From Macrostomum hystrix (taxonomy: Eukaryota > Animalia > Platyhelminthes), in NCBI GenBank assembly GCA_950097015.1, contig CATNEN010000026.1, positions 1,488,001 to 1,552,000 of the forward strand: a DNA stretch of 64,000 bases, given 5' to 3'. Numbering within the stretch: the first letter of the stretch is position 1; every line of letters starts with the position of its first letter. A program made the position numbers and the translations under genes. The notes under the pieces are model-generated. The model searched no databases and was not told where the DNA came from. It was given only the letters and a program-made list of their open reading frames with translations. Below, in pieces: positions 15,910 through 60,516 of the stretch.

Positions 15910-17352
15910 TCAAATTAAATTGTAGTGTCCCTTTTTCAGCTTCAGTTGTGCCCGGAGTTTGGTGTTGCTATTTGCTGTTTTGCTGCTTGTCTTCGCTGCC
16001 GTAATTTTGCCATCGAACCTGGAAAAACTCTTGGATTCGCCACGCTGCCATTGCCCATCGGCGCCTTTTACCTCTAGCAGCAGGTACTGGTTATTGTACA
16101 CCTGATTCTCTAGGGTCTGATCCTTGTCAGTGAGTAGGTCGTAGCTTGTGCCGCTCAGAGACACCCACAGTCGGGTTTCGCGATCTTCCGGCACCTTAAA
16201 CAGCGACTTCATGGTGGCCTCTACATCGCTGAAAAGACAGGCGCGGGAGAACTTCTGGCAGATGGTCTTGTCCGGACTAGCCAGCTCTGCCAGCTTCAAG
16301 TCCAGCAGGTAGACTTCAATTTCCAAGGTGCGGGTGAACTTGCCCTTTTCTATCACTTTGCGAAAGATTGGCTCTGGCTGTTTGGTCTTGTAATAGTTGG
16401 CCAGCAGCTCCCAGGCATCCTTGTGCATAAAGAAGTAGTTAATTTCAGCAAGTGTGCCCTCCTTTAATCTGCCATCAGGCTCAAGGATGTCGGCATTGTC
16501 AATGGGTCCAGGATGATAGTTCTCATCACCCAGTTTGCTTACATAGAAGGATTCGCCGCCAACATACTCCTTCCAAAGCTTCACCCAGCGTGAGGAAACC
16601 ACAGCCCAGGTGTCTCCTTTGACTAAAGCAGTGAGATTTAACTGCTTCACCTTCTCAAATTGCTTTTTTAACTCGGCTCTGAGTGCCTCACACTTTGGTG
16701 GTACAACAGCAAGCTCACGTTCAACTATAGACTGCCTCATGTTGATCACTGTCGCAGCAGAGTCACTTGCCAGCTGGTCGATCGCGCTCTGCAGTTGCAT
16801 CACCGACATGACTGAGGTCTCTCTCACGGCAGCTCGCGCCACTCGCTCTCTCTCAAAGTCATCCTTCAGCGTGTCCACAGACCACAGCATGGACAGCGTG
16901 AGCTGGCACAGTTTCTGCATGTCGCCGCTCGCCTCCGTCTCCGACTCCTCTCTGCGGAACTCGCCGATGTCCTCACAGTCGGCCAGCAAGGTCTGAGTTG
17001 AATCCAGCTTCTCTGTGAGCTGCCGAACCACTCTCGACTCCCACTTGTTGATGGACTCACGAGCTGACGCAAACGCTTGCTGAACTGTCCGAAGGCCCGC
17101 CGAGGTGTCGTTGACTCGCTGTCGAAGCGACTGCAGATCGTCGGTAGGGAGCGATTCCAGCTTGTCGTGCAATTCTCTCTGCAGCCTTCGCACATGCTCA
17201 GTGTCCTCTATCAGGTGGTTGGTGCACTTCGGCTGCCGGCTGTGCGGTCCGATGCCAGCCGCAGGACTGTCGCATGTGCACACGCAGCATGGAGTCACTG
17301 TCTGTGCTAATCTGTTTTCACCTTGTGCATCTGAATCACCTGAGTTGCTCAT
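15910..17352 (-). CDS. 480-aa intronless protein: Cys/His-rich N-terminus + coiled coil + USP4/USP15-type DUSP and UBL domains, no catalytic USP domain
   Basis: [70 protein letters not shown] align by eye with the USP15 N-terminus ([70 protein letters not shown]). Stop follows ~40 aa after the UBL. Confidence 0.88.
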   Translation of the reverse strand: [480 protein letters not shown]

Positions 17353-18326: not shown

Positions 18327-20359
18327 GCCAATGGCCGGAAGTTTAACTTTCATGATAGTTAATAGATTTTACATTACCTTTGTGCTGAAACTGCCTATAC
18401 ATCCCGAAGATGCAGCATATTTTTACCACTTTTTACAATACTGCTTTGAATTTAAGAGAAGCTTGCATCGAGTTTCTAAGAATAAAGAGAAGTCGCAGTC
18501 GCAGAATTGTCAAAGTTGCTGCTACTGGCATTGCTGCTTGCTGCTTGATGCAGCAGGAGTAGAGGCCAAGAATGTTCATCCTGTTGTTGGCCTGGGGTGC
18601 CTAGGCTATTCTTGCTGTTTTCTGGTTCTGGAAGTTCCATGTCCTCCACTTCATCTTCTTCAACGCCTTCCCCCATGTCCACATGACCGTGTGAATTGAT
18701 TCACATGAGTGAATATGGAGTCACTAAAACTTCTATTTTTAATTTTTCTTTTTAACTTTATTTTCTGTCACCTTAGATAAAAGTCAACTACCAAAAATTA
18801 TTTTTTGGATCTGGGGGCTGTTAACTTTTCCCCAGGACCTGCTATATACGGGTTTGCTCTATTGCGTTTTAAAGTCTACCAACCTGCCATATGCTCAGTA
18901 CAATATACTCAGTAAGACTCCCCGGTCGCCAGCAATAGGGCCAGCAATAGACTTTTGAAAACTTGGTGTGCCACTGCTGGAAATGAATGAATTTTATTTA
19001 TTTTGACCCACAGATTCTGTGCCACGCAGAATTGAGGCCTCCAAGACAGGTCGCTTGGATCCAGAGCGGCGAAATTTGTTTTTTTTTATTGCTGGAGCTA
19101 TTGCTGGTCTCCCACTCCGTGACGCAATGAGGAAAATGTGTGCCGTTTCTATTTTTAAGAGAAGCATAACAGGTTCTTCTTGTGTCACACTACCCAGGGT
19201 TTGTGCCGCTCTGTCTAAGCATGTAGGAAGTAATAAAGTACTTTTACGGCTTTACGCCAGTCATTTTATTGCTGGACTTACCACGCTGCACAGAGCGGCT
19301 AAAATGGCACACAATACATATTTTTCGCTTTATTAGCGCAAGAAGTAACTGTGCCACAATATTTAAGAGTACTTGCTATTAGTCTAGGCACATTGCTAAA
19401 AACTATGTAACGTCCCTATAATCTATAGATGTCTTCAAGGATCGTTTGTCGTGAAATATTCAAACTGCAGCTAAAGTTTTCAACGAACTTGTCGTACCCC
19501 ACGTGGTGTGAAACCCTCAACACTTAGGATTCGAAGCACTATTTTTCGAAATGAAGCTCTATTAGAATATTACTTTCAACAATAGTATATACCCTTTTGT
19601 GGTTTAATTTATGTGCAAAGACTGTCAAGAGTATAGTGTTATGCAGTGTATAGCTAGACCTAGTTATACATAGACCTACACTTGTGGGGGAGAGAAGAGT
19701 TCTAACCCTATATGGCTATGGAAATGGAATAGAGAAAAAGACTTTCTAAAAGTTTCTCATATGATTTTTTGCTTTTGAACAAAAGATAGCTATGCCTATG
19801 CTTAGCTATATAGCTAGCTAAAGCAGGATTAAGATGGCTATGAAAAAATCCTAGAAAAAAGAATGTTGTACTTAGACTTAGAATACTGTAGAGCTAGTTA
19901 TGACAATTTTAATATAATTGTATTCCTCAAACATATTTCATTGAATATATATATAGAAAGCCAACTTGATATGATATTATATAATATTAAGCATATTTAT
20001 TATTTAACATTATTGTATACTCACATAGGGAAAAATGAAATTGTCTATTTGTTTGTTAACTTCTCTAAAAAAATGTATAGACTGACATGCTAAAAAAGAC
20101 AAAATATTTTTCCCTCATTATTTGTTTACTCTATTTAGATTCCACAATTTGGTTTATATAATTTATTCAATTTACTTATATTTGGGTTCAATAAATGATT
20201 AGCTACTTCTAAATTCTATATTCTAGCTTATATTGTCACATCAAAATTTTGTCTTTCAAGTTCAAAGAAATTTATTGCTATATTTGCTATTGTTTTTGAT
20301 AAACCATGATTATCTTGTCTAGCCATGTCAGCTATGCCTAGCAATATATAATAATGTCT

Positions 20360-21570
20360 AGGCCTAGCCATGCCCAGCCAAGCCAAGCCATGCCAAACTA
20401 TGCCTAGCCATGCCCAGCAATGCCCTACAATGTATAACCATGTCTAGCCATGCCCAACCATGCCCAACTATTCACAGCCATGCCCAACCATGCCCAACTA
20501 TTCCCAGCCATGCCCAACCATGCCCAACTATTCCTAGCCATGCCCAACCATGCCCAACTATTCCCAGCCATGCCCAACCATGCCCAGGCTTGCCAAACCA
20601 TGCCTAGCTATACCTGCCATGCCCAACCATGCCTAGCCATGCCCAGGCTTGCCAAACCATGCCCAACTATTCCCAGCCATGCCCAACCATGCCCAACTAT
20701 TCACAGCCATGCCCAACCATGCCCAACTATTCCCAGCCATGCCCAACCATGCCCAGCCATGCCCAGGCTTGCCAAACCATGCCCAGGCTTGCCAAACTAT
20801 GCCCAGCAATGTCTAACCATACGTAGCTTTACATGCCATGCCCAGCAATGTCTAACCATGCCTAGCTATACCTGTTATGCCCAACCATGCCCAACTATTC
20901 CCAGCCATGCCCAACCATGCCCAACTATTCCCAGCCATGCCCAACCATGCCCAACTATTCACAGCCATGCCCAACTATTCCCAGCCATGCCCAACCATGC
21001 CCAACTATTCCCAGCCATGCCCAACCATGCCCAACTATTCACAGCCATGCCCAACTATTCACAGCCATGCCCAACCATGCCCAACTATTCACAGCCATGC
21101 CCAACTATTCCCAGCCATGCCCAACCATGCCCAACTATTCCCAGCCATGCCCAACCATGCCCAGCCATGTCCAGGCTTGCCAAACCATGCCCAGGCTTGC
21201 CAAACTATGCCCAGCAATGTCTAACCATACGTAGCTTTACATGCCATGCCCAGCAATGTCTAACCATGCCTAGCTATACCTGCCATGCCCAACCATGCCC
21301 AACTATTCCCAGCCATGCCCAACCATGCCCAACTATTCCCAGCCATGCCCAACCATGCCCTACAATGTCTAACCATGCCCAGCCATGCCTAGCAATGCCC
21401 AGCCATGCCCAACCATGCCCAACCATGCCCTAAAATGTCTAACCATGCCCAGCCATGCCTTGCAATGCCCTACAATGTCTAACCATGCCCAGCCATGCCC
21501 AGCCATGCCAAACCATGCCCTACAATGTCTAACCATGCCTAGCCATGCCCAACCATGCCTAGCCATGCCG
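20360..21570 (+). repeat. 10-bp-based (CCATGCCCAA) minisatellite with 30-bp higher-order unit; inner part of the left TIR
   Basis: Direct reading; inverted copy at 25355-25700. Confidence 0.95.
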
Positions 21571-22244
21571 TCTCTCGAGCTTGTTCCTTGCCGTAATGTG
21601 CCTTTAAACATGAGACGCGTGCTTTTGTAACGTTTCCTCATTCCTCACTTTTTTCAGTTCGATTTGTTCCATGGCGCTTGTCAGTCGCATTTTATGTAGG
21701 CAACCTTTGGAGTCTGAGGTTTTTGTACAATTGGCTCCTCTAGGAAGCTCCTACGTCTGTCCTGCGGGTTCGTTCGCTTCGTGGGTTGATCTAGACAACT
21801 GTCCTCCATCTCTTGCCAGGCTCCGGCTTTAAGAACTGCCTTAAGAACAGCCATTATGGGACTAGTGGCCATTCAAAATCGTACTACTGGAGGTCTGATC
21901 ATGCTGTAAGTCACTTTCGTGTTCAATGAAATGTATGCATTCTTTTATTATAGAAACGTATGTTCTAGTGTACTCTTGGTCCAGTTCTTCTTCTATTCTA
22001 ATAGACCTGTGTTATTGCAATCGGTATTCTGGTTTTTGTAGTTCAGTTTTATTGGAACAATCGTAGCAAGGAGAACATAAATGATTGATATATTTATGCA
22101 TCAGTATTTTATTCACCTTTTTACAATTGAGAGTGACTGTCTAAATAATGCGCTCCTTCACAGGCTCTATGCTAGCTTCCGGTATCAGGCGGATCTGGCA
22201 GTCCGGTTCGCGGACTCTGGTGGCATTCACTGAAACTTCGCCAT

Positions 22245-22793
22245 ATGGAAGACGATGTCTTTCACAACTTACTGCTGAAACAAGTGGATTTGCGAGTGAC
22301 TGCTTCAGATGGCGGCATTGGTACTCAAGTCGATGGTTCACCGAAGCAAGCCGAGAAGCAGCAGCAGATTGTGCAGACTGACGAAGGCATGCGACAGATG
22401 CAACAGCAGCTGGACGAAGGCCTGCGGCAGATGCAGCAGGACATGCAACAGCAGCTGGACGAAGGCATGCGGCAGATGCAGCAGGACATGCAACAGCAGC
22501 TGGACGAAGGCATGCGGCAGATGCAGCAGGACATGCAACAGCAGCTGGACGAAGGCATACGCCGAAGGAAGCAGACAGTGCAGGAAGGATCTCTGCCTGC
22601 AGCAGCTTCCAAGGTTCATCGATGTGAAGATGGCAGTTCCGACGAGGGAGAGCCGGAAGCTCAAATGCAGAGGGAACTAGAGACTGTACCGAAAAGGAAA
22701 ACGACGAAGAAGGGAACACTTTGCAATCCATGGAGCGGGGCTAGCGTGCAAACCAGCTGTACTGCCCGAATTTTGCGCTCGAGACGGGTTTAA
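22245..22793 (+). CDS. Cargo ORF, 182 aa, Gln-rich with 15-aa (45-bp) repeat QQLDEGMRQMQQDMQ, predicted coiled coil
   Basis: ATG-initiated ORF; repeat unit is a multiple of 3 with non-repetitive in-frame flanks; GC-richer than surroundings. No family recognised. Confidence 0.5.
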   Translation: MEDDVFHNLLLKQVDLRVTASDGGIGTQVDGSPKQAEKQQQIVQTDEGMRQMQQQLDEGLRQMQQDMQQQLDEGMRQMQQDMQQQLDEGMRQMQQDMQQQLDEGIRRRKQTVQEGSLPAAASKVHRCEDGSSDEGEPEAQMQRELETVPKRKTTKKGTLCNPWSGASVQTSCTARILRSRRV

Positions 22794-23546
22794 TGCAAGC
22801 TGTTTTAGCATTTTGCCTTATAGCCTTTGCGAAGCAGTGATTTCAGGAGCAAAAAATTGTGCTTTTAATCAAGCACAAGCAGCTGTAAAATAAGATCGTA
22901 AATGTGACTTCTTTCAAGTGGAATGCATTGCGGCTAAAATGAATATTACGAGCTATATGCTGAATGCCATATGCTACATGTATATGCTTAAGCCGACGAA
23001 CGATGACTATCACGCGCAAAATGTTTTGCGGTTTTATTGTATATTGAAGCTACTAAAGCTACATTTTTGAACGGATACCAGTTACGCTAAGCACATCTAT
23101 CTTGTCAAACAGACAATGACAAGATGACAATCTTGTCTATCTTGTCAACGGCTAAATATAGTTGTTGGATCATTGTTCGCTACATTTCAAATTGGCATTT
23201 CTGTTTAAGGACCAGATTGTCTGGTCTTCACTAGCATGCACAACAAGTTTGTCAAAGTTTTTCTCCTGCGTCAGTTTATTCTCGAACCCACGAATCTTAC
23301 GCGCGTATTATCATAGCGCTTTTCCAAAATCATAAGGGCAGCAATATCGTGCATTTCTATCGCTCTCTCTTCATTTCTTTTTTTAAATAAGAAGTAAAGT
23401 GCTGGAAGCAAGCCGTTTACAAGCTTGATTACTGAAAACGAAACAAACAAAAGTGATTTCTGAAGCTTGTCTCTAACAAACTGGTCGTAAGTTGTGTATA
23501 CTTGTAAAATGTTTGCGTCAAACTGACGCGAAGAAAATAAAATATA

Positions 23547-23972
23547 CCTCTGCGATTGAAATCATCCAAACTCACAAAACAATTCATCCAGTATGGGCTG
23601 GTGACTGGGCATCGCAGTCAGTCTCTGTCATAGACACCAGCGTTCCCGCAAAACGACCCAGCCAGTCTGCGAATCATTTCGTCCATGATACAAGAGATAA
23701 GAGAGGAAAAGAGGGCTGAGAGACGGAGATAGAAAGGAGGGGGTGGAGAGGTTTGAATTGGGGTACCGCGCACCGTGTTGGCGAAAAGGGGTAGGAGCTA
23801 TCTATGGTAGAAAGCCCCAGCCCCAGTGCAGAGGATGAAATGATTCGCAGACTGGATGAATCGTTTTGCGGGAACGCTGGTGTCTATGGCAGAGACTGAC
23901 TGCGATGCCCAGTCACCAGCCCATACTGGATGAATTGTTTTGTGAGTTTGGATGAATTCAATCGCAAAAAGG
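23547..23972. mobile_element. 426-bp MITE with ~135-bp TIRs, flanked by TATA
   Basis: 23547-23680 is the reverse complement of 23837-23972; TATA|CCTCTGCG...CGCAAAAAGG|TATA. Confidence 0.8.
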
Positions 23973-24417
23973 TATAGTAGATACGATCCTGTCATGAGAA
24001 TACAGCAAGCCAGCGTAATGCAATGGCTGAGGCAAAAGTATCGCACACATAAAAGCGGGTCAGAAAAGATAAATGAAACTATTATACAAGGCAGCAAAAG
24101 TTGTTTTACGCTGTGGGGACGCGCATTGAAGCCAGGAGAATATTCATATGTAAAAGGGTAAACGATTCCGTCTGAATACTTTAAAAGCTGTAAGAGGCTA
24201 GGAACATAGGAAAATATATATGAACGCTATATTCACCACAAACAGGAAAGCATGATTTGCACTTGTAGAAAGAAATAAATGCTGTGTTCATTCTTAATCA
24301 GTGATGGGCGCGCTGCTCAATGATGGGGATCGATATCTTCATTTAAAAGTAACGCTTTCCCCGTTACTCCACGAAGTACAAAAATAACTAAGATGGCAAT
24401 GATCGATAGTTACTATA

Positions 24418-24627
24418 CCTTTTTGCGTTTTAGTTCGTCACATCTGCTATTAATTTCGGCAGACACGAAAGAGTGACATTTTCCCATAGACAAAAGTCCA
24501 TATATCGCACCCGCAAGCATCTGCAATTGTATTCGGCATCATTCAGAATTGAAAGCGAATTTTTATGTGCTAGTGACAGCCCTTGCCGAAATCAATTGCA
24601 GATGTGACGAATTGAAGTGCAAAAAGG
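24418..24627. mobile_element. 210-bp MITE with ~45-bp imperfect TIRs, flanked by TATA
   Basis: TATA|CCTTTTTGCG...TTCGTCACATCTGC... and ...GCAGATGTGACGAA...GCAAAAAGG|TATA. Confidence 0.75.
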
Positions 24628-24820
24628 TATATTTCTGATGTCTCTGTTTTCCGGCCATTTCTTGGCTGGTACCGACAATTACTACCTCTACTGTTAATTA
24701 TCACGTCCAAAACTTCCTAAGGATAGCAGCTCCCAGCGAATGCAGCGCTGGTATCAAAATTCGAAGCAGAATCGTGCGAACTCGTGCGATTAGCAGAGCC
24801 AATAGAGACAGCTGTGAAAA

Positions 24821-25345
24821 CTACCGATAAAAAAGTGCGCAGCAATTGAACTTAATGTCATGAAATGCGGATGACAGGCTCACTTTCCGTACACTTAAAT
24901 CGCTTACACAGAAACAATTGCAATCGTCGGGAAAAGTGTATGCAATGTAGTGACCGCTCTGGGCTGAACGGCCCATGTGAACAACAGCCGCTCGAAGCGT
25001 GTATTTTCTACCTGACAGAGTGAGCTTCATTTCGAGAGGAATAGCCGATGAGCATTTTAATATGGCACCGCTCTTCGGGTCAACTCGGACTCGATCAACA
25101 CCGATGCACAGGCATTCAGATGTCGATGCAAGTACTTGAATATGAATGCGTCGACCATTTCCGCAGTTCGGATCTGAACAAGGAATATCTGTCTGCTCCG
25201 AGGTGGACATCATAGCTTGTCGCACGATTAGGGGAAAATCGCGGTCATCGTTTTCCCGGACTGGCAGGCGGAGAATTGTTACAACATCTATGCCATTCAC
25301 TCGACTTGCAATGTGGCATATGGAGCAGACAAGAGTTGTCTTTAT
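24821..25345 (-). CDS. C-terminal half of a ubiquitin-specific protease (peptidase C19) catalytic domain, carried inside the foldback element
   Basis: After acceptor CCCACAG| (phase 0): CSIC...CSDPNC (finger Cys), YTLRAAVVHMGRSAQSGHYIAY (His box), VSDLSVRKV (ND..V equivalent), terminal LFYR. No Cys box (G..N.GNTC) found upstream. Confidence 0.8.
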   Translation of the reverse strand: MKTTLVCSICHIASRVNGIDVVTILRLPVRENDDRDFPLIVRQAMMSTSEQTDIPCSDPNCGNGRRIHIQVLASTSECLCIGVDRVRVDPKSGAILKCSSAIPLEMKLTLSGRKYTLRAAVVHMGRSAQSGHYIAYTFPDDCNCFCVSDLSVRKVSLSSAFHDIKFNCCALFYR

Positions 25346-25354
25346 CTGTGGGCA

Positions 25355-25700
25355 TGAGTTGGGCATGGCTGTGAATAGTTGGGCATGGTTGGGCATGGCT
25401 GGGAATAGTTGGGCATGGTTAGGCATGGCTGTGAATAGTTGGGCATGGTTGGGCATGGCTGGGAATAGTTGGGCATGGTTGGGCATGGCTGGGAATAGTT
25501 GGGCATGGTTGGGCATGGCTGGGAATAGTTGGGCATGGTTGGGCATGGCTGTGAATAGTTGGGCATGGTTGGGCATGGCTGGGAATAGTTGGGCATGGTT
25601 GGGCATGGCTGGGAATAGTTGGGCATGGTTGGGCATGGCAGGTATAGCTAGGCATGGTTAGACATTGTTTGGCATGGTTGGCATGCTGGGCATGGCTAGG
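25355..25700 (-). repeat. Inverted copy of the CCATGCCCAA minisatellite; inner part of the right TIR
   Basis: (GGGCATGGTTGGGCATGGCTGGGAATAGTT)n read directly. Confidence 0.95.
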
Positions 25701-28023
25701 CCTTGACATTATTGTATATGGCTAGGCATGGCTGACATGGCTAGGCAAGATAATCATGGTTTATCAAAAGCAATAGTTGATTTAGTAAATATAGTAATAA
25801 ATTTCTTAGAACTTGAAAGACAAAATTCTGATATGACAATAGGCCTATAAGCTAGAATATAGAATATAGAAATTGCTAATCATTTATTGAACCCAAATAT
25901 TTAAAGTAAATTGAATAAATTATATAAACCTAATTGTGGAATCTAAATAGAGTAAACAAATAATGAGGGAAAAATATTTTGTCTTTTTTAGCATGTCAGT
26001 CTATACATTTTTTAGAGAAGTTAACAAACAAATAGACAATTTCATTTTTCCCTATGTGAGTATACAATAATGTTAAATAATAAATATGCTTAATATTATA
26101 TAATATCATATCAAGTTGGCTTTCTATATATATATTCAATGAAATATGTTTGAGGAATACAATTATATTAAAATTGTCATAACTAGCTCTACAGTATTCT
26201 AAGTCTAAGTACAACATTCTTTTTTCTAGGATTTTTTCATAGCCATCTTAATCCTGCTTTAGCTAGCTATATAGCTAAGCATAGGCATAGCTATCTTTTG
26301 TTCAAAAGCAAAAAATCATATGAGAAACTTTTAGAAAGTCTTTTTCTCTATTCCATTTCCATAGCCATATAGGGTTAGAACTCTTCTCTCCCCCACAAGT
26401 GTAGGTCTATGTATAACTAGGTCTAGCTATACACTGCATAACACTATACTCTTGACAGTCTTTGCACATAAATTAAACCACAAAAGGGTATATACTATTG
26501 TTGAAAGTAATATTCTAATAGAGCTTCATTTCGAAAAATAGTGCTTCGAATCCTAAGTGTTGAGGGTTTCACACCACGTGGGGTACGACAAGTTCGTTGA
26601 AAACTTTAGCTGCAGTTTGAATATTTCACGACAAACGATCCTTGAAGACATCTATAGATTATAGGGACGTTACATAGTTTTTAGCAATGTGCCTAGACTA
26701 ATAGCAAGTACTCTTAAATATTGTGGCACAGTTACTTCTTGCGCTAATAAAGCGAAAAATATGTATTGTGTGCCATTTTAGCCGCTCTGTGCAGCGTGGT
26801 AAGTCCAGCAATAAAATGACTGGCGTAAAGCCGTAAAAGTACTTTATTACTTCCTACATGCTTAGACAGAGCGGCACAAACCCTGGGTAGTGTGACACAA
26901 GAAGAACCTGTTATGCTTCTCTTAAAAATAAAAACGGCACACATTTTCCTCATTGCGTCACGGAGTGGGAGACCAGCAATAGCTCCAGCAATAAAAAAAA
27001 ACAAATTTCGCCGCTCTGGATCCAAGCGACCTGTCTTGGAGGCCTCAATTCTGCGTGGCACAGAATCTGTGGGTCAAAATAAATAAAATTCATTCATTTC
27101 CAGCAGTGGCACACCAAGTTTTCAAAAGTCTATTGCTGGCCCTATTGCTGGCGACCGGGGAGTCTCAGTAAGGCAGTTTAAACTGACTGTTTTAGTTAAA
27201 TTAATAACGTGAAACTTAAAAAGAATGCAAGTTAAAAATGTACATGTGAACAAATTTTGGAGTCCTTTTTTATTTATTAGGCAAGTCTAACTTTGTTAAA
27301 GTGTGTTAGTAAATATGGTAAATATTTGATATTCTTTTTCTTAGAATCGAAAACCGTAATTCTAAAAAACAACAAGAAACCTTCAGTATTTTTATCCTTT
27401 TGTGGCTGACAACTGTACCGGGCATAGACGAATGTACAGAATCTTTAGCGTCACTGTCGGTAATTGTCCTTAGCCTTTTATCTGTCCTTATCTACAGCTC
27501 TATCTAGCAAAAAGTAAAATAATGCCTAGTAAATTCTTGGAAACAATGCTTAAGCTTGTTTGCTAGATAGAACTATTTAAAGTAAGATATATGAATGAAA
27601 TAAATACTTGACTAGATAGATGATTTTCTTTATTTAAATTGTAGTTGCCTTTCTTCCAATGATAGGACACTACCAGGTGAAGTGTAAAACTAAACAAAGA
27701 TTGAGCAAAGTTAAATAGCTAATGTATATAAAAAAGAGAAAAAAAATGGTGTGAACTGGTAGCTTTAATTTTGGTTTTGAATATTGAAAAGGTTATAATT
27801 TCATATCTTTTAGCTAGGTTTTGTAGCTAGGATAGGTCCTGTGCAAGTCAGGTTTGTTCCAATCAATTTATTTTTATCTAATCCATAGCTATGCCTATAC
27901 TATTATCCAAATTTATATTTATCCAAATAAAACTTTGGGTTAAAGGGTAACCACCCATTGCGAGGAATAGGAGCTGATTCGTTAGCTGCAGTGGCGTAGC
28001 TGGGAGGGTATACAGGGATATAT

Positions 28024-28638
28024 CCCATAGTCCGGATCATGCTGGTTACGGCGGAAATTTCCGGCGTAAATGTTGCTGGTAAATATGTTGGCCGGCGTAA
28101 GGTTGGCGTAACTTTTGACCAAAAAATCTGGTGGCGTAAGTGGTTGGCGTAACCACGATCACCACGATCGTGAATCACGATCATATGTATCACTATAGAA
28201 CATAACACCAAGGACCACTAGAAGAAGAACAAGAAGAAGAAGAAGAAGAAGAAGAACTCTTCTTCTAGTGGTCCTTGCATAACACATTTGCGTTAATTAT
28301 GATGTTTGCGTTAATTAGGAGCAGCATTAAAACAAAGTTCATTAAAATATTGCAGTTCATATAAATGAGATAGCAGAATATCTATTGTAGGATAGCAAAA
28401 GTTTTTTTAGCTTTAAGATGCTTACTTTGATACTTGATTCAGAATTTGCAACTTGTGAGATTTTTAAACAGTTGCAACTTCTGAATTTAATTAATCACCG
28501 ATTAACATGATTTGTGAAGGACCTTTTTTGGGTGGCGTAAGTCAGAGGGACCTTTTTTGGTTGGCGTAAGTCTGGCGTAAGTGCCAAAAATGTTGGATTT
28601 TTCCTCCGGCGTAAGTCCAGCATGATCCGGACTATGGG
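28024..28638. mobile_element. 615-bp MITE with CCC...GGG termini and ATAT(AT) target duplication (piggyBac-like ends)
   Basis: Perfect 22-bp TIR CCCATAGTCCGGATCATGCTGG / CCAGCATGATCCGGACTATGGG; ATATAT on both sides; many subterminal GGCGTAA motifs. Confidence 0.82.
28209..28277. mobile_element. 69-bp mini-MITE
   Basis: Perfect 20-bp TIR CAAGGACCACTAGAAGAAGA / TCTTCTTCTAGTGGTCCTTG around a 29-bp GAA-repeat spacer; exact 8-bp TSD CATAACAC at 28201-28208 and 28278-28285. Confidence 0.88.
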
Positions 28639-31462
28639 ATATATCCCCCCAAGTGGCAGAAAAATTGGGGGAGAGTTGAAAGGGGGAGTATTACCATTAA
28701 AATACAGTCCATTTTTTATTGTTCATTCACATTTTTTCATTTACCCCCCTATCAAAAATTCTTAGCTACGCTACTGGTTAGCTGTAACACTTAGTAAGAC
28801 AAGGCTGTCCCCTATCCCCTCTACTCTTCTCACTATATATAGATCATTTGAACACAATGCTAAGGGATTCATTTTGCAGCGACACCTTCATTAAAGATGA
28901 ACAAATCAACAACTTGCTATACTGCAATGATTTAGTGATCTTCGGAGAGAATCCTCAAGAGTTGCAGAAGGGCCTCGATAAAGTGTCTGAATTTTGTCAA
29001 AGCCACAAGCTAGAAATCAATATGCAAAAAACTAAGGTTATTAGCTGTTGCCCTGACCCATCAAAGATGGCTAACAAACTATTTCTGCAGGGACAACTGT
29101 TAGATAGCTGTTAAATAAAAAATTATTTGTAAACAGATCAGCTCAGCTCATGCTGTACTGCATAGCAATGATAGGAAGCATGGCTCTGTACGCCTCCGAG
29201 GCCTGGGGGGCTTTTTTCTCGTGGAACCTGGGTCCTTGGGACCGCTGTCTTTTGGAAAGGGTAAACATCAGGTGCTGTAAAGCCATACTACAAGTCAGCC
29301 AAAATACGGATAGGAACGGGGCCCGCTCAGAGTTAGGCAGATTGCCTTTATTATACAACATCCAGAAAAGAAGCACTTCGTACTGGGCCTCCATAACAAG
29401 CCGGCCGGACTCCATAATTTTCAAGTTATTGGCAGACCAAACATACAGTGATGTTGGAATCAAAACAAAGATCAACAATGACGTTATGCTGAACTGCAGA
29501 GGCATTAGTCCTGCAAAAGCAATTAAAAACCACAGGAAAAATTTTGTTTCTCAGTTCAATACCCTTTGGAGACAAAGGACACAGAACACAAGCAAGCTAA
29601 GTCATTTCTATTACTCCTTCAAGCAATATTATTCAGCGAAAAATATTTACAACAAATATACAACCCAGAGTTGAGACGTACCATATCCTCATTTAGACTA
29701 GGAAACCATAAGCTAGCTTGCAAAACATTGCGAACTGCAAGACCAAAAATTCTGTATGTGAATAGATTATGTAGTAAGTGCAAAACAGAAGTTGAAAACG
29801 AGGTCCACTTCCTTTTTAAGTGCAGTTGGAATATGTATAGTGTAGCACATTCGAATTTTGAGAAGGAAATTTCTGGGAAAACTCCCAATTTCATATCCTT
29901 AACAGCAGAAGAGAAATCTAACTACATAATGGCTCAAGACAATCGGGAAACCATTGAAGCTTTAGCAAAATACATCATAGGTATCTCTAAAATAAGGGAA
30001 CAGCTGCCCTGAGACTACGAGCTCGCACATAGTGTATTAACATTTAACAATATATATTTAATATTTTGTTTTATTCCTGGCGTCCCTTGTGTTTTTACTG
30101 CTCTTATTTTTAATACCTTTGCTTTTGCTTTTCCCTTCCCAGCTCAATAGTTGAATCCTACAAAACTTCGCTTTTTATGTTATGTTTCTTGTTGTCCAGT
30201 AAAATATTTGTTGTCAAAAAAAAATAAAAAAAAATCAGCACCTATAGATGGTGTGAGCATTTTAATAATAATAATAATAATAACTTAAATGTACAGTTTT
30301 GAATAGGTAGGTAGGTTCCAATAACATTTAATGGCAACAAGAGCAGATCCATTTAGAGGTCCAAAGCTCTTAAAGCTCTATATTATAAAATAAACTGCCT
30401 TGGTCCCACAGTACCCTATAGTCCATTGCAGTCCATTACAGTCCCATTGTGGTTCATTGCAGTCTTTTTCGATGTTTATACAGATCCCTAAGGGGTAATG
30501 AAGAGTGCATGCTCATCCTCTTCCCAACTTGGCCAACCTAATTTGGTGGGACTTGGCCTATCATAGTTTTGTTTGCCTTATCATAGATTATCTTAGTAGC
30601 TTACTAGGGCCTACCTAGACAAGAATGAACCAGATTTGCAGCACCTTAGTTATCCAACCAGCATTATCACGAGGCCACTCCACCCACTCATGTCATAATG
30701 GCCACTTAACAAATTGTCAGAAATGAGAAAAGCTACAAATAATCAAGTAACTCGCCTTTGAGTTTAACTGTTAGGATAGTAAAGCAAAGAAAGTTATAAT
30801 TCCACTAAGCTGATTAACATCTAGAAATGTATAGACATATCCAAAATATACCAATGCTTATTCTCATGAAATGATTATGAATTTGATATTTATAGTTTGA
30901 TTAGCTTGAATATAAATATAATACTATATAATACATTATAGTTAGAAATGATATTTTTGTATGACTGCTGTCCAACATGTTGGAAGTATATATATTATTC
31001 TTTTTTACACATTTGTATATATAATTTTTGTCTTGCACTATCCTAGCTAACCAATCAGAAGCCAACCAGTTAAATCAAATTTAAGTATTCAAAATGAAGC
31101 ATCAAACACAAAGGGCCTATAGAACTGCAGTGTGTGTCAACAAATAATTTTAATGGCCTATGATTAAAAATTAGTTATTTTGCTTTGAAACTGCTTCAGA
31201 AAATTGTAAAATGGATTTGCAGTTGTCTCTCTCACATGTACTTATTTTTGTTACAATTTCAGAATTCAATGTAAAGAATCACTTTGTGCAATTTGCAAAC
31301 CATTTTTTAAAAGAAAACATTTTAGAGAGATTTTGCAAATAGTAAAGTGGTGATAAACTGCCTAAATACAGTCACAGCTAAAATTATTATTGGCTGTCAT
31401 AAAGCCAGCAGACATTCATCTTCATCTGTACAAAGAACATCGATCTATAAACTACAAGATCC

Positions 31463-34709: not shown

Positions 34710-34981
34710 AGCCAAATATGCAGCCGACAGCACAGCCACAACGATTGCGCGGTGCATCTAAAGGCTGCCACACAGCTGTTCAGTCCATGGACTGGGGGGA
34801 CGCCACAGCCACTCTCAATTTACCCCAGCTAATTCTGGTACCAATTTAACAGCTGGGTGTACTGAAGCAATGCAGAGTTAAGTGTCCTACTTAAAGACAC
34901 AAATTGTTCCATTGGAGTTGAGAATCGAACCCCCGACCTTTAACTCTTGATTCCGACGCTCTAACCTCTTGGCTACGACTC
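34710..34981 (-). mobile_element. tRNA-derived SINE, copy 1
   Basis: Minus strand begins GAGTCGTAGCCAAGAGGTTAGAGCGTCGGA (A-box-like)...GGGTTCGATTCTC (B-box-like), then AACAATTTGTGTC body shared with the copy at 60345-60516. 3' end approximate. Confidence 0.78.
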
Positions 34982-52934: not shown

Positions 52935-53815
52935 TCAATGGGCACAGTCTGACCAAACCCTCTCCAACCCCAGCCTCCCAATGTACACTCAGTCTGACCA
53001 AACCCTCTCCAACCCCAGCCTCCCAATGTACACTCAGTCTGACCAAACCCTCTCCAACCCCAGCCTCCCAATGTACACTCAGTCTGGCCAAACCCTCTCC
53101 AACCCCAGCCTCCCAATGTACACTCAGTCTGACCAAACCCTCTCCAACCCCAGCCTCCCAATGTACACTCAGTCTGACCAAACCCTCTCCAACCCCAGCC
53201 TCCCAATGTACACTCAGTCTGGCCAAACCCTCTCCAACCCCAGCCTCCCAATGTACACTCAGTCTGACCAAACCCTCTCCAACCCCAGCCACCCCAATGT
53301 ACACTCAGTCTGGCCAAACCCTCTCCAACCCCAGCCTCCCCAATGTACACTCAGTCTGACCAAACCCTCTCCAACCCCAGCCACCCCAATGTACACTCAG
53401 TCTGGCCAAACCCTCTCCAACCCCAGCCTCCCAATGTACACTCAGTCTGACCAAACCCTCTCCAACCCCAGCCTCCCAATGTACACTCAGTCTGGCCAAA
53501 CCCTCTCCAACCCCAGCCTCCCAATGTACACTCAGTCTGACCAAACCCTCTCCAACCCCAGCCTCCCAATGTACACTCAGTCTGACCAAACCCTCTCCAA
53601 CCCCAGCCACCCCAATGTACACTCAGTCTGGCCAAACGCTCTCCAACCCCAGCCTCCCAATGTACACTCAGTCTGGCCAAACCCTCTCCAATCCCAGCCT
53701 CCCAATGTACACTCAGTCTGGCCAAACGCTCTCCAACCCCAGCTACCCCAATGTACACTTGTACACTCGGCCTGGCCAAACCCTCTCCAACCCCAGCCTC
53801 CCCAATGTACAGTCA
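52935..53815. repeat. 45-bp minisatellite (CCCAATGTACACTCAGTCTGACCAAACCCTCTCCAACCCCAGCCT)n
   Basis: Direct reading; FARP intron 9. Confidence 0.96.
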
Positions 53816-53845
53816 AATTACACTAATCACTACCCAACCATCCAG

Positions 53846-56800
53846 GAGTTCCGGCGGCGCCCGCTCTCTGCCAAGCCGGTCACCCGCAGCTCGTCGGGCG
53901 CCTCACCTTCAGAGCGGTGTCGGCGAAGGCGGCGGAGGAAGAGGTGGCGGCAGCGGCCATTGGCCTGGTCTGCACAACAGTAGCTCCGCCAGGTCGGCGA
54001 CGTCAACATCGTCGGCGGGGTCGCACATTCTGCTAGCCGGAGGCGGCCTTGGTGGCGGCACAGATTTTGACTATGGCCACCGGAGTCGAACCCTGCCAGC
54101 TGGACAGCATTATCATCATCATCAGCAGCAGCAGCAGCAGGGCTACCAGCAGCCTCAACAGTACCAGCAGCAGTATCAGCAGCAGCAGCAGCAGCAGCAG
54201 TATTATCAGCAGCAGCAGCAGCATGGGATGTCTGGAGCGGCGGAGTTTCCAGGAAACAACCACAGGGCGGTGTCGGTGTCGCCGCCTGGATTCCTCCGCG
54301 CACATCCGCAGCCTCTTTTGGTGCAGCCGGCAGGCGCCTCTTTTGTAGCAGCCCCGTCTAGTGCGCCCAAACTGCACAGCCGATCCCGCTCGCTGCCCGA
54401 CGATGAGTCGCCGCCGTCGCCACCGCCACCGCTTCCGCCGCCTCCGCTTACAATCTCGGCTACATCGCTGCAGTCGTCTCTATCGCCAACTCCTCCACCA
54501 CCGCTGCCGCCCCCGTTGTTACACGACGACGACATTGGCAACGAGATCGGCGAAGTCATACTCAACAACGGCGTCATCTTGACGGCGCCATTGACTCATC
54601 GGCATCAGCGGCATCATCAGCATCAAATGGATGATTCTACGGATGACGCTGTGGACGAGGACGCGGAAGTCACACCCGATGATGCTGAAGATATCGGCGC
54701 GGGACATCGGTACTATCCGGCCGTAGGCGTCGTCGGATCAAGCAGTGGCGGCCGCGGTTTCCGTCGCAGTGCAATCGACGATTTTGTCGCCCGTCGAGCT
54801 GTCTGCGTCGATTTAAACAGCTCGAGCGACTCCGAGTTGGCCGCCGCGGGCGCAGCCGTCGGCATCGCCGCAGCCGCCGTGTCGGTTTCGGCAACAACGG
54901 CAGTCTCGTCCACCATAGCCGGGGCGACTGGAGACGACGGCCTGATGGTCACCCTGGACAATCTGCCACCGTTGGACAACTTCTCCTATCGTGACGACAC
55001 TGTGGCCACTCCGCCAGTCACCGCAGTGGAGCGACTGGCGAACACCGAAGCGTACGTGAACTCGCACCGGGGCTATCGGTTCGCCTCGGATCTGTTGCTT
55101 TACTACGAGGACGGCGTGGTTGGTCCGCAACCGCCTCCTCCGCCGCCGCAGCCTTCGCAGCCGCCTCAGAAGCAGCCGATGCAGCAGCAGCCGCAACCAA
55201 ATTTGGGTGGCACAGCCTCAGATAGTCAGGACAGTCAGGATGAGTTGGCTGTCTATTTAGGCGGTATCGCCGGAACAGGAACAAAGTACTTCCAGCTGCA
55301 GCAGCAGCAGCAGCCACAGCAACACCAGCTGCGCAGGGGTCTCTCAGCAGCATCGACCAATTCAATTGATGAAGACGATGACGATGACGACGATAATTAC
55401 GGCAATCGGGGTGCCGACTACGGCGGAGACGAGCGAATGAGCAGGCCGCGTTCCGTCAGCCGGCTGGAAAGCGCCCTGGCCACGCCTAAGACTGGTTCGC
55501 CGACAGCTGACCTTGCGCTTGACGATGAGGACGACGATGAAGATGGCGAAGGTGAGGAGGACTATAACGACGACAACGATGATGATCAGTTCGCGTTAAA
55601 CGCTGACGCTGCGATGGAAGAAGCCGCTGCAGTTATGATGCGGCATCATCGGGTGCCTCGAGAGATCGCCGTTCAAGCCGACGATCATCTGGATATGGAC
55701 GATGACGAAGCCGAAGCCGCAATCGGGCACCAGACAGTCGACAGAGTCGACAGCGAAACTCAGACTCCCGGTGGTAATGTCGATGCTTCATCCACTGGTA
55801 GCGTAGGCGTCGATGTCGGCGTTGTCGGCGGCCCAGTATGGTCCGACACTGTCGGCGTTATGTCGGGCGCCGTTTTGGGTGTCAACGTCGGCGTCGGGCG
55901 CGGATTCGTCACGCTGAGCACCGTCAACGAAGAATCTGACGGCGGCTCTGCGGCCAGCTGTCGCAGCGGCTCAGTCGAACTCGGCGGCGTTGGCGTCAGC
56001 GGCGTCAGTGTTGGAGCTCTGGCCATCTCACTGCAGCAGGGCGAGTGCGTTCGCGTGGATCTCAGCAGTTCGAGCAGTTCCGACGGCGAAGGCGAAGGCG
56101 ACGCCGACAGAGACGTCTGCAGTGACGTTGAGTCGACCGGTCAGCGACCGCCGACGCCGCCACCGCCGCCAAGCAAGTCGCTGCACTCCCCAGACTCAGC
56201 AGCTTCCAATTCAATCACTGGCGGAGGCCGTCTAAGCTGCCGCCTGCGACTGTCCTCGGGCTCTTCGCCTTCGTCAACGTCATCATCTGTCCAGTCGGTG
56301 GCCTCTGACGACGACGCCTACGAGCAGCAGTTCGAGTCGCGCACTGAGCGGCTTCACGGCTCTGTGGTTGGCCCCGCGCCCACCGGCCCGCTGCCTCCGC
56401 CGCCGCCGCTGCTGCCTCCGCCATCGTCGCTTCTAGAGTCGTCTGAGCTGCCGCCACCTCCTCCACCGCCGCCTCCATTGCCAGCCGGCTTTTTCAGCCG
56501 GTCCTCAGCGGCGCCAACCCTCGACGCGCTGCTAGAAGAGGCCGAAGCCTCCGCAGCCGCCTCCGTGACCGCCTCGCCGGTGCCGCTGTCCCCGGCTCGG
56601 CAGCAGCTGAACTCCGGCGTTGTCTACGAAGAAGTTGTCCAACGCCGAGCCAAGCCCGGCGACCCGGCCGCGCCGCAGCGTCGCTCCGGGCCTCCGATTC
56701 CGCCGAGAACAACCAGCATCTCCAGCTGGTCCCCTGTCATTGCTGCGCATCCGCAATTTGGCGATCAGCAACAGCAGCAGCAGCAGCCCGCTGATCTGGC

Positions 56801-56933
56801 TGCTCATCAGCAGCTGCCGCCGCCACCGCCCGAGCTGCTCCACCTGCACCTGCTGGAGCACCAGGCCAGCAACTACACGAGGCGGCAGAATTTCTTCGCT
56901 AATCCTTACGCTGCCACGGCTGAGACCCCTTGA
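53846..56933 (+). CDS. FARP: 3.1-kb terminal exon 10: ~1030-aa disordered tail (poly-Q, poly-P, Asp/Glu and Ser runs); spliced product is 1376 aa
   Basis: CATCCAG| phase-2 acceptor in frame with exon 9; open to TGA at 56933. Summed exons = 4131 nt, an exact multiple of 3. AATAAA at 58016. Confidence 0.85.
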
Positions 56934-60344: not shown

Positions 60345-60516
60345 GCCAAACCCACCCTTAATTACCCAACTAATGCTGCGCCGATTTAACAGCTGGATGA
60401 ACAGTGCAGTGTTAAGTGAATTGCTGAAGGACACAAATTGTTCCAGTGGAGTCGGGAATCGAACTCCTGACCTTTAAGTCTAGAGTCCGACGCTCTAACC
60501 ACTAGGCCACAGCCCC
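60345..60516 (-). mobile_element. tRNA-derived SINE, copy 2, in the lectin intron
   Basis: GGGGCTGTGGCCTAGTGGTTAGAGCGTCGGA...GGAGTTCGATTCCCGACTCCA (A/B boxes) plus body shared with copy 1. Confidence 0.8.

What the first reader, a model, noticed from the sequence alone, without database searches (positions are those of the whole stretch)
18917..27163. 8.25-kb foldback element with kilobase TIRs carrying a USP protease half-domain and no transposase
Seen: ~1.45-kb unique TIRs plus mirrored minisatellites (up to ~1.8 kb of inverted pairing), an exact flanking repeat CTCAGTAAG, and two inward-facing cargo ORFs (Gln-rich on +, USP His-box on -), each just inside a TIR. Established: long TIRs with 9-bp TSDs are typical of Mutator/MULE and foldback elements; maize MuDR transcribes two genes convergently from its TIRs; Pack-MULEs capture gene fragments; transposon-borne proteases I know are mostly Ulp1 (C48) or OTU. 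Inference: an animal Pack-MULE-like family transducing or using C19 deubiquitinase sequence. The TSD is ambiguous (9 bp with ACTC ends, 7 bp with GACT ends, or 5 bp with AG...CT ends as in Mavericks), so the superfamily is open.
Basis: partly seen in the sequence, partly recalled or inferred. Interest (0 to 1): 0.8.

Follow-up and report, generated by a model that had tools for sequence, protein, structure and literature searches.

The report
Foldback transposon carrying a deubiquitinase exon
This 8.25-kb stretch looks like a real but ordinary kind of mobile DNA: a non-autonomous "foldback" transposon with 1.45-kb inverted ends in an animal (probably flatworm) genome. It picked up the last exon of a deubiquitinase gene and has no transposase of its own.

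Summary
Two inverted arms (18917-20361 and 25698-27163) are followed inward by mirrored 10/30-bp minisatellites of unequal length (1.2 kb and 0.35 kb). They enclose a 3.8-kb middle, and an exact 9-bp direct repeat found nowhere else in the window flanks the whole unit. A 9-mer, CCAGCAATA, occurs ten times in the window, all in the outer 360 bp of the two arms.

The USP ORF is real but is only the 3'-terminal exon of a USP17-like gene. It holds the fingers and the His/Asp half. It starts at an intron acceptor conserved with a relative's gene, within 3 nt of the minisatellite. The Cys-box half is absent from all 64 kb. No transposase or virus-like domain was found.

Best reading: a non-autonomous foldback-type TIR transposon, most likely Mutator-like with a 9-bp duplication, that transduplicated host DNA. 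A 7-bp or 5-bp duplication is not excluded.

No other copy, empty site or autonomous partner could be looked for, because the source genome is in none of the collections. Family status therefore rests on structure alone. I rate it a new member of a known kind, of moderate interest.

The parts
18908..18916 (.). Left copy of the 9-bp direct repeat CTCAGTAAG (putative target-site duplication)
   Evidence: The 9-mer occurs only here and at 27164-27172 in the window.
18917..20361 (+). Left terminal inverted repeat, unique 'flanking domain'. The outer ~600 bp are 43% GC and the inner ~840 bp are 28% GC.
   Evidence: 1428 of 1445 positions match the right arm. The 105-aa ORF at 19019-19336 has no Pfam hit.
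18929..19275 (.). Cluster of five copies of the subterminal motif CCAGCAATA in the left arm: two direct at the tip, three inverted further in
   Evidence: All 10 of 10 window matches lie in the two arms; 0.64 are expected by chance.
20362..21569 (+). Left tandem-repeat domain, a minisatellite of 10/20/30/50-bp period (~1.2 kb). It contains five CCAGCAAT variants.
21570..25348 (.). Unique middle domain (3.8 kb), read as acquired host DNA
   Evidence: It has no counterpart elsewhere in the window. No Pfam domain was found in its small ORFs.
22245..22793 (+). Gln-rich ORF (182 aa) built around 3.6 copies of a 45-bp repeat; coding status doubtful
   Evidence: There are only sub-threshold coiled-coil-type Pfam hits. 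The antisense ORF 22141-22731 is also open.
23551..23966 (.). Nested MITE-like element with 134-bp inverted arms at 95.5% identity
24821..25345 (-). Terminal exon of a USP17-like deubiquitinase: 174 codons plus the stop. It covers the zinc-ribbon fingers, the His box and the Asp box. It is preceded by an acceptor-like CAG at 25348-25346.
   Evidence: Pfam UCH. Own USP profile, positions 210-380 of 395, E 6e-37. 53% identity to Macrostomum lignano A0A1I8IIT2. The exon start is the same as in locus L001. AlphaFold model pLDDT 87.9, and its best PDB folds are all USP domains.
25349..25697 (-). Right tandem-repeat domain: the same minisatellite, inverted, only ~0.35 kb
25698..27163 (-). Right terminal inverted repeat (flanking domain), with its own five CCAGCAATA motifs at 26805-27151
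27164..27172 (.). Right copy of the 9-bp direct repeat CTCAGTAAG

Best explanation
This is a non-autonomous class II (cut-and-paste, TIR) transposon of the foldback structural type, inserted once at this site.

**Shown**
- Each arm consists of a unique 1.45-kb flanking domain followed by a tandem-repeat domain.
- The outer 360 bp of each arm carry five copies of a 9-mer that occurs nowhere else in the window.
- The whole unit is bracketed by an exact 9-bp direct repeat.
- The middle carries no transposase.
- The middle carries the complete 3'-terminal exon (acceptor to stop) of a USP17-like gene, but not the exon with the catalytic cysteine.

**Inferred**
1. A transposase made elsewhere binds the repeated 9-mers. 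It cut and pasted the element, and staggered cuts 9 bp apart gave the duplication. That size, the kilobase TIRs and the minisatellite point to the Mutator/Foldback (Phantom- or Rehavkus-like) lineage.
2. The middle domain is host DNA taken up by transduplication, as in Pack-MULEs. Alternatively it was trapped between two arms that then moved as one unit.
3. The arrays expand and contract independently in the two arms. The outer arm parts are kept near-identical by exchange between arms.
4. The USP piece cannot act as a protease on its own. It is most likely a passenger. Its intact acceptor means it could be spliced into transcripts that run into the element.
For: - **Arms and arrays:**
- **Direct repeat:** the 9-bp repeat occurs only at the two junctions.
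- **Subterminal motif:** all 10 of 10 CCAGCAATA matches, and all 15 of 15 CCAGCAAT matches, lie inside the element. Chance expectation is 0.64 and 3.2.
- **No enzyme domains:** no transposase, polymerase, integrase or capsid domain in the ORFs of the arms and middle.
- **USP half only:** Pfam UCH profile 150-241 of 254. My own profile matches positions 210-380 of 395 at E 6e-37, and nothing matches the N-terminal half in any frame of 64 kb. tblastn with a relative's first exon finds nothing.
- **Relative's gene structure:** L001 has both halves separated by a GT..AG intron. The window exon starts at the same codon.
- **Conserved residues and fold:** the near-invariant His and Asp are kept. The fold is USP-like, with TM-score 0.55-0.62 on the query and only 0.3-0.45 on the targets.
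- **Literature:** foldback elements have a flanking domain, a tandem domain and a middle, with 8-10 bp TSDs and unequal repeat numbers between arms (PMC4079207, PMC3169594). MULE TSDs are 8-11 bp, and MULE clades with 9-bp TSDs and minisatellites occur in animals, including Platyhelminthes (PMC6446971).
Against: - Only one copy has been seen. The rest of the window has no TIR-related DNA, and the source genome is in none of the collections. Multiplicity, polymorphism and an autonomous partner are therefore untested.
- The duplication can also be read as 7 bp or 5 bp. By my count of the coincidences each reading needs, 9 bp is favoured only about 4-fold and 16-fold.
- The array meets the exon within 3 nt of a conserved acceptor. 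That is not expected of a random capture breakpoint (roughly 1 in 100 for a 1.2-kb intron), and it hints at selection on splicing.
- The parent gene was not found, so capture is inferred from the missing half alone.
Confidence: 0.6

Rival explanations
1. It is the same transposon, but the USP exon is not a dead passenger. It is a splice-competent cassette that is expressed, either from an exon or promoter in the arm or from host transcripts reading into the element. The product would be a half-DUB: the fingers and palm, which form the ubiquitin-binding surface. It could act as a decoy or be fused to other proteins. The minisatellite would serve as the end of the intron.
For: - The array ends 3 nt from an acceptor whose position is conserved with a relative's GT..AG intron.
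- 174 codons are open to the native stop, against a chance of about 2e-4.
- Near-invariant family residues, including the catalytic His and Asp, are retained.
- The model is confident, with pLDDT 87.9.
- M. lignano has gene models with only this half (P0026) or with a tandem-repeat translation fused to a piece of it (P0033).
Against: - A recently captured exon would also be intact.
- No expression data are available.
- No AATAAA or ATTAAA lies within 850 nt after the stop.
- No coding exon is recognisable in the arm.
- The M. lignano family is low-copy, and its gene models may simply read through introns.
- With 40% of the window made of minisatellite, adjacency to an array is common.
Confidence: 0.15
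2. It is a foldback-like transposon of another superfamily. One option is P-like, as Galileo, with a 7-bp duplication (TCAGTAA) and G...C ends. The other is a gene-less derivative of a Maverick/Polinton-type element, with a 5-bp duplication (CAGTA) and AG...CT ends.
For: - The inverted repeat extends two bases into the 9-mer, so all three readings fit the sequence.
- Galileo has kilobase TIRs with internal tandem repeats that differ between arms, and 7-bp TSDs (PMC3573991).
- The foldback structure is said to arise independently in different superfamilies (PMC4079207).
Against: - The shorter readings need more chance matches of flank to terminus: 1/64 and 1/256, against 1/16 for 9 bp (my count).
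- No THAP, P-type transposase, polymerase, integrase, capsid or protease domain is present.
- No element of either type was seen in the window.
Confidence: 0.15
3. It is not a transposon. It would be either an inverted segmental duplication (palindrome with spacer) formed by repair or replication error, or two independent insertions of a 1.8-2.7-kb repeat in opposite orientation on either side of a host exon.
For: - Only one copy is known.
- The genome region is extremely repeat-rich: 32 arrays cover 40% of the window.
- The exon keeps its splice acceptor, as a resident host exon would.
Against: - An exact 9-bp direct repeat sits precisely at both outer ends and nowhere else. The chance of that is about 4e-6 per position.
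- That 9-mer is absent from the inner arm boundaries, which independent insertions would have duplicated.
- The repeated 9-mer motif in both orientations near the tips is a transposon hallmark.
- The Cys-box exon expected of a resident gene is absent from the 37 kb upstream.
Confidence: 0.07
4. It is an assembly artefact, a fold-back chimera of long reads.
For: The outer 1150 bp of the arms are almost identical, with 1 mismatch.
Against: - The arms differ by 16 mismatches and 5 indels overall.
- The arrays are 1208 bp and 349 bp.
- A 3.8-kb unique middle separates the arms.
- The unit is bracketed by a direct repeat.
- Chimeric reads give spacer-less perfect palindromes.
Confidence: 0.03

Closest known systems
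Foldback elements: Drosophila FB and Tetris of D. virilis (PMC4079207)
   Same: - Non-autonomous.
- Each TIR has a unique flanking domain and then a tandem-repeat domain, around a middle domain.
- TSDs are 8-10 bp.
- Arrays vary in length.
   Different: - Here the flanking domain is longer (1.45 kb against up to 866 bp).
- The repeat unit is 10/30 bp rather than ~220 bp.
- The middle holds a recognisable host exon.
- The host is not an insect.
- No sequence similarity was tested.
Tm1, a Mutator/Foldback family of root-knot nematodes (PMC3169594)
   Same: - Composite TIRs of variable length.
- 9-bp TSDs.
- Short motif repeats whose number differs between the two ends of one element.
- Many copies lack a transposase and carry other sequence (Cg-1).
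   Different: - Tm1 arms are built of 14-bp units and are much shorter.
- A Phantom-like transposase copy is known for Tm1, and none is known here.
Pack-MULEs of plants, and Turmoil-1 of C. elegans (PMC5861414, PMC2572040)
   Same: A DNA transposon without a transposase that carries a fragment of a host protein-coding gene (transduplication). Turmoil-1 is the animal precedent.
   Different: - Pack-MULE TIRs are hundreds of bp, without arrays.
- Turmoil-1 carries its fragments inside the inverted repeats.
- Here the fragment is exactly one terminal exon in the middle domain, and the parent gene has not been identified.
Galileo (P superfamily) of Drosophila (PMC3573991)
   Same: - Foldback-like TIRs up to ~1.2 kb, with internal tandem repeats.
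- Unequal repeat numbers in the two arms.
- Repeats thought to hold secondary transposase-binding sites.
   Different: - Galileo has 7-bp TSDs and a P-type transposase.
- Here 9 bp is the more likely duplication, and no transposase is known.
Animal MULE clades Phantom, Rehavkus and Curupira (table in PMC6446971)
   Same: - 8-10 bp or 9-bp TSDs.
- Present in Platyhelminthes (Curupira, Phantom).
- Minisatellites are noted in Phantom (aphids) and Rehavkus.
- TIRs reach 613 bp.
   Different: - Those are defined by a DDE transposase, which this element lacks.
- Their TIRs are shorter.
USP17/DUB3-like deubiquitinases (peptidase family C19)
   Same: - The exon's best named relatives are USP17-like (Holothuria P0035; a Thomomys array protein, P0028).
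- The fingers zinc ribbon, the His box and the Asp box are present.
- The predicted fold is that of a USP.
   Different: - Only the C-terminal half is present.
- The Cys-box/thumb half is missing.
- Identity to the nearest relative is 53%.

Membership tests
Foldback-type transposons (structural class) | Long TIRs made of a unique flanking domain plus an internal tandem-repeat domain, around a middle domain | tested here: met
   The layout is 1.45 kb, then an array of 1.2 or 0.35 kb, on each side of a 3.8-kb middle.
Foldback-type transposons (structural class) | Flanking target-site duplication (8-10 bp in FB, Tetris and Tm1) | tested here: met
   An exact 9-bp direct repeat sits at both junctions and nowhere else. 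A 7-bp or 5-bp reading is not excluded.
Foldback-type transposons (structural class) | Dispersed, multi-copy family with insertion polymorphism | not testable with these tools
   The source genome is in no collection. There is no other copy in the window. The metagenome scan gave only chance hits.
Mutator-like elements (MULE) | TSD of 8-11 bp | tested here: inconclusive
   9 bp is the longest and most likely reading, but 7 bp and 5 bp also fit.
Mutator-like elements (MULE) | Mutator-type DDE transposase, in the element or in an autonomous relative sharing the TIRs | tested here: not met
   No transposase domain in any ORF of the element or in the large ORFs of the window. An autonomous relative could not be searched for.
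Pack-MULE / transduplicating transposon | A host gene fragment lies between the TIRs and there is no transposase | tested here: met
   The terminal USP exon is present and the Cys-box half is absent.
Pack-MULE / transduplicating transposon | A parental gene is identifiable elsewhere in the same genome | not testable with these tools
   The nearest relatives are 53% (M. lignano) and 50% (Logan locus L001) identical, and they come from other genomes.
Galileo / P superfamily | 7-bp TSD and a THAP-bearing P-type transposase | tested here: inconclusive
   A 7-bp reading is possible. No THAP or transposase domain was found.
Maverick/Polinton | Protein-primed polymerase, retroviral-type integrase, capsid, packaging ATPase and maturation protease genes | tested here: not met
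   None of these domains appears in any ORF tested. UCH is the only family over threshold inside the element.
Ubiquitin-specific protease (C19) catalytic domain | Cys box with the catalytic cysteine (N-terminal half, thumb) | tested here: not met
   My own USP profile and tblastn with a relative's first exon find no N-terminal half in any frame of the 64 kb.
Ubiquitin-specific protease (C19) catalytic domain | His box and Asp box, and the fingers/palm fold | tested here: met
   Pfam UCH at 30.2 bits against a cut-off of 23.9. H132 and D149 are kept. Foldseek probability is 1.00 for USP18, USP30 and USP46.

The most novel reading that the evidence does not exclude
A flatworm foldback/Mutator-type family may carry a splice-ready terminal USP exon as a working cassette. 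The minisatellite of the arm would serve as the intron's end. Wherever the element lands in a transcribed region, or from a promoter in its own arm, it would yield proteins ending in, or consisting of, the ubiquitin-binding half of a deubiquitinase. That would be exon shuffling by a DNA transposon in an animal, or a transposon-made decoy of the ubiquitin system.
Probability: 0.1. Interest if true: 0.7.

Novelty: new member of a known kind. Interest (0 to 1): 0.38.

Why it matters
Capture of host coding sequence by cut-and-paste transposons is well documented in plants. In animals it is rarely documented; Turmoil-1 of C. elegans is the precedent I found (PMC2572040).

This would be a clean animal case: a whole terminal exon, with its splice acceptor and stop, inside a foldback-type element with a sharp duplication. 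It would be useful for asking how such elements shuffle exons.

It would also give the transposon catalogue of a very repeat-rich genome a family with kilobase TIRs. Such TIRs are prone to cause inversions and assembly errors.

The value is limited until other copies and transcripts are seen.

Tried and rejected
**Searches that led nowhere**
- The word search with the USP half found nothing. The exhaustive search was then used and did find relatives.
- Exact look-ups of window ORFs found none on record. The same was true of M. lignano P0026 and P0033.
- The metagenome scan with the doubled tip motif gave 120+ hits. All are unrelated 12-nt periodic repeats, and blastn of the whole element against them gave nothing. 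The pattern was too unspecific.
- Rfam and tRNA scans of the window found nothing.
- The bacterial-type promoter/terminator scan of the arm is not meaningful for an animal.

**Ideas rejected**
- That the USP half belongs to the neighbouring DUSP-UBL gene. The order on the strand is wrong and the subfamily is different (USP4/15 queries do not detect it).
- That the Cys-box exon sits in the arm or upstream.
- That the reading of the minisatellite into the USP frame is coding. The array is open in several frames on both strands.

**Human-labelled items.** Two such items came back from searches and were not used: protein P0025 (a human USP4 isoform) and locus L029 (a contig labelled 'human metagenome'), which I excluded from the comparison. 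I do not take the window itself for human. Its USP4-like ORF is only ~37% identical to mammalian USP4, and its best USP-half relative is from a flatworm.

Full report
**1. The observation**

The inverted repeat is there. Ungapped extension gives arms 18908-20072 and 26008-27172. A gapped alignment pairs 18915-20725 with 27165-25349 over 1840 columns at 95%.

A global alignment of the unique parts (18917-20361 against 27163-25698) gives 1428 matches, 16 mismatches and 5 indels. The differences are not evenly spread. The outer 1150 bp carry one mismatch; the inner ~300 bp carry 15 mismatches and all but one of the indels (Fisher p = 4e-10).

Inward of each arm lies the same minisatellite in mirrored orientation, with period 10/20/30. 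It spans 1208 bp on the left (20362-21569) and 349 bp on the right (25349-25697).

On the + strand the 9-mer CTCAGTAAG sits directly outside each arm. These are its only two occurrences in the window. No other long inverted repeat, and no other DNA related to the arms or the middle, is found in the remaining 55.7 kb.

The unequal arrays, the 3.8-kb unique middle and the arm differences argue against an assembly fold-back artefact.

**2. Transposon hallmarks**

The 9-mer CCAGCAATA occurs ten times in the window, against 0.64 expected and none of 100 shuffles reaching ten. All ten lie in the outer 360 bp of the two arms: two direct copies at the tip and three inverted copies further in. The 8-mer CCAGCAAT occurs 15 times, all inside the element, five of them in the left array.

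Repeated subterminal motifs in both orientations are what transposase-binding sites of TIR transposons look like. That is established knowledge, and Galileo and Tetris are discussed in these terms in PMC3573991 and PMC4079207.

The direct repeat can be read three ways, because the inverted repeat runs two bases into it:
- 9 bp, with termini ACTCC...;
- 7 bp, with termini G...C;
- 5 bp, with termini AG...CT.

Each reading needs some chance coincidences, which I counted as 1/16, 1/64 and 1/256. So 9 bp is favoured, but not decisively. This is my inference.

**3. What the element carries**

No ORF of the arms or the middle has a transposase, polymerase, integrase or capsid domain.

*The USP ORF.* ORF 24821-25636(-) hits Pfam UCH above threshold (30.2 bits, cut-off 23.9), but only on profile positions 150-241 of 254. 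Its first ~97 codons are a translation of the minisatellite, which is open in several frames on both strands.

*Relatives.* The word search found no relatives, so I used the exhaustive search:
- best hit P0026, Macrostomum lignano A0A1I8IIT2, 53% identity, E 9e-48;
- next a Logan protein, 50% (P0027/P0074);
- then weaker hits, including a USP17-like protein of a sea cucumber and a rodent USP17-array model.

*The relative's gene.* Its genomic locus L001 was recovered from four sequencing runs. It shows the gene structure of the family:
- an upstream ORF that matches positions 82-190 of my own USP profile (the Cys box to the QQD box, E 3e-6);
- a GT..AG intron of about 1.26 kb;
- an ORF matching positions 205-380.

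I searched the two exons apart and did not join them.

*The window exon.* The same profile matches only positions 210-380 (E 6e-37), and nothing in any frame of the 64 kb matches the N-terminal half. tblastn with L001's first exon is also blank.

The window exon starts at 25345, after an acceptor-like CAG. Exactly as in L001, five residues precede the VCS of the first zinc-ribbon motif. It also ends at the family's native stop.

The minisatellite ends at 25349, so the array meets the exon within 3 nt of a conserved splice acceptor.

*Residues and fold.* The near-invariant family residues, including the catalytic His and Asp, are kept. An AlphaFold model of the 174 residues is confident (pLDDT 87.9). 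Its best solved-structure matches are all USP catalytic domains: TM-score is 0.55-0.62 normalised on the query but only 0.3-0.45 on the targets, which fits a half domain.

The piece therefore covers the fingers and the palm His/Asp half of a C19 protease, without the thumb that carries the catalytic cysteine. It cannot be a protease alone.

*Other content of the middle.* The Gln-rich ORF (22245-22793, +) sits on a 45-bp repeat of 3.6 copies at 99% identity. It has only sub-threshold Pfam hits, and the opposite strand is open as well. I regard its coding status as open. The middle also contains a nested MITE-like inverted repeat at 23551-23966.

**4. Surroundings**

- **Minisatellites.** The window is 40% minisatellite, in 32 arrays of different units.
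- **A second USP-related ORF.** 1.6 kb to the left of the element, on the same strand as the USP exon, a 480-aa ORF (15910-17352) encodes a coiled-coil region followed by DUSP and UBL domains. It is about 37% identical to vertebrate USP4 and arthropod USP15. Its catalytic domain is not in the window. It is of another USP subfamily and lies in the wrong order to belong with the exon in the element. I cannot explain two USP-related pieces within 8 kb.
- **Right flank.** There is another MITE-like inverted repeat (28015-28647) and a truncated non-LTR retrotransposon remnant with an RVT_1 hit (28848-30012), split over at least three reading-frame pieces.
- **Source organism.** It is an animal. The best relative of the exon is from the flatworm Macrostomum, at only 53%, and none of ten window ORFs is in the protein collection. 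The species is therefore not identified.

**5. Mechanism**

My best-supported reading is a non-autonomous foldback-type TIR transposon. A transposase encoded elsewhere would bind the repeated 9-mers and insert the element with a 9-bp staggered cut.

The middle domain is host DNA, acquired in one of two ways:
- by transduplication, as in Pack-MULEs (PMC5861414; animal precedent Turmoil-1, PMC2572040); or
- by two arms moving with what lay between them.

The arrays change length independently in the two arms, as in Tm1 and Galileo (PMC3169594, PMC3573991). The sharp step from 99.9% to about 93% arm identity suggests exchange between the outer arm parts. All of these steps are inferred. What is shown is the anatomy.

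The superfamily is probably Mutator/Foldback. MULE TSDs are 8-11 bp, and MULE clades with 9-bp TSDs and minisatellites are recorded in animals, including Platyhelminthes (PMC6446971). Without a transposase this is not a membership claim.

**6. Rivals**

- **A functional, splice-competent USP cassette.** This is kept alive by the precise array-acceptor junction and by the intact, conserved exon. There are no expression data, and a young capture would look the same.
- **A P-like or Maverick-derived origin.** This depends on the shorter TSD readings and has no gene support.
- **A non-transposon inverted duplication, or two independent insertions.** This does not explain the unique 9-bp repeat at the outer ends only.
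- **An assembly artefact.** This is unlikely, for the reasons given in section 1.

**7. Limits, and steps left out**

- No collection at hand holds the source genome. Copy number, empty site, autonomous partner, and whether the family is already catalogued could therefore not be tested.
- A human USP4 protein (P0025) and a contig labelled 'human metagenome' (L029) were returned by searches and not used.
- I slipped twice in my reasoning by writing a short nucleotide string from memory: a flatworm spliced leader and a guessed Foldback terminus.

**8. Verdict**

It is a transposon of foldback type with a captured half-USP and no transposase. The 'family', 'MULE' and 'using the protease' parts are unproven.
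- It is a new member of a known kind, with interest about 0.4.
- The most novel reading not excluded is an exon-delivering cassette. I give it about 0.1 probability.

Noticed in passing
window 15910-17352 (-): A 480-aa intronless ORF with an N-terminal coiled-coil region followed by DUSP and UBL (Ubiquitin_3) domains. It is ~37% identical to vertebrate USP4 and arthropod USP15. No USP catalytic domain follows it in the window. It lies 1.6 kb outside the element, on the same strand as the captured USP exon, but belongs to a different USP subfamily. The proximity is unexplained.
   Followed up: partly
window 1-64000: 32 minisatellite arrays (periods 10-46 bp, 0.15-3.2 kb each, nearly all with different units) cover about 40% of the window. 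Many long ORFs in the window are mere translations of these arrays.
   Followed up: partly
window 18917-20361 vs 27163-25698: There is a step in arm identity. The outer 1150 bp have 1 mismatch; the inner ~300 bp have 15 mismatches and 5 indels (p = 4e-10). This suggests exchange or conversion limited to the outer arm parts, or a chimeric origin.
   Followed up: partly
window 23551-23966: A MITE-like element is nested in the middle domain, with 134-bp inverted arms at 95.5% identity and ~148 bp between them. No clear duplication was read.
   Followed up: partly
window 28015-28647: A second MITE-like inverted repeat (arms ~43 bp, 93% identity) with many short GGCGTAA-type subterminal repeats and an AGA microsatellite inside.
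   Followed up: no
window 28848-30012 (+): A remnant of a non-LTR retrotransposon: the end of a reverse-transcriptase domain (RVT_1, E 7e-8) and a C-terminal region with a weak zf-RVT hit. It is 5'-truncated and split over at least three reading-frame pieces.
   Followed up: partly
window 53751-56933 (+): A 1060-aa open frame in a 57-61% GC stretch, encoding a low-complexity Gln/Pro/Ser/Asp-rich sequence. Its only Pfam hit is a sub-threshold TFIIA poly-Q match. It is probably a large exon of a host gene.
   Followed up: no
window 34802-34973 and 60345-60507: A dispersed direct repeat of ~170 bp at 79% identity. It is the only other non-tandem repeat pair in the window.
   Followed up: no
P0033 and P0026 (Macrostomum lignano proteins), P0075: M. 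lignano gene models of the same USP-half family also lack the Cys-box half. P0033 is a translated tandem repeat fused to a piece of the USP exon, echoing the array-exon junction seen here. The family is low-copy among annotated proteins.
   Followed up: partly
L001-L004 (Logan contigs from runs SRR31628425, SRR31628394, SRR31628392 and SRR31628434): The same 3.4-kb locus, at 99.97-100% identity, was recovered from four runs of an unidentified organism. It holds the two-exon USP gene that is the window exon's second-closest relative (50%).
   Followed up: partly
P0032 (Logan, 1146 aa): A distant relative combines a protein-kinase domain with a complete UCH domain in one ORF. This is an unusual architecture.
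   Followed up: no
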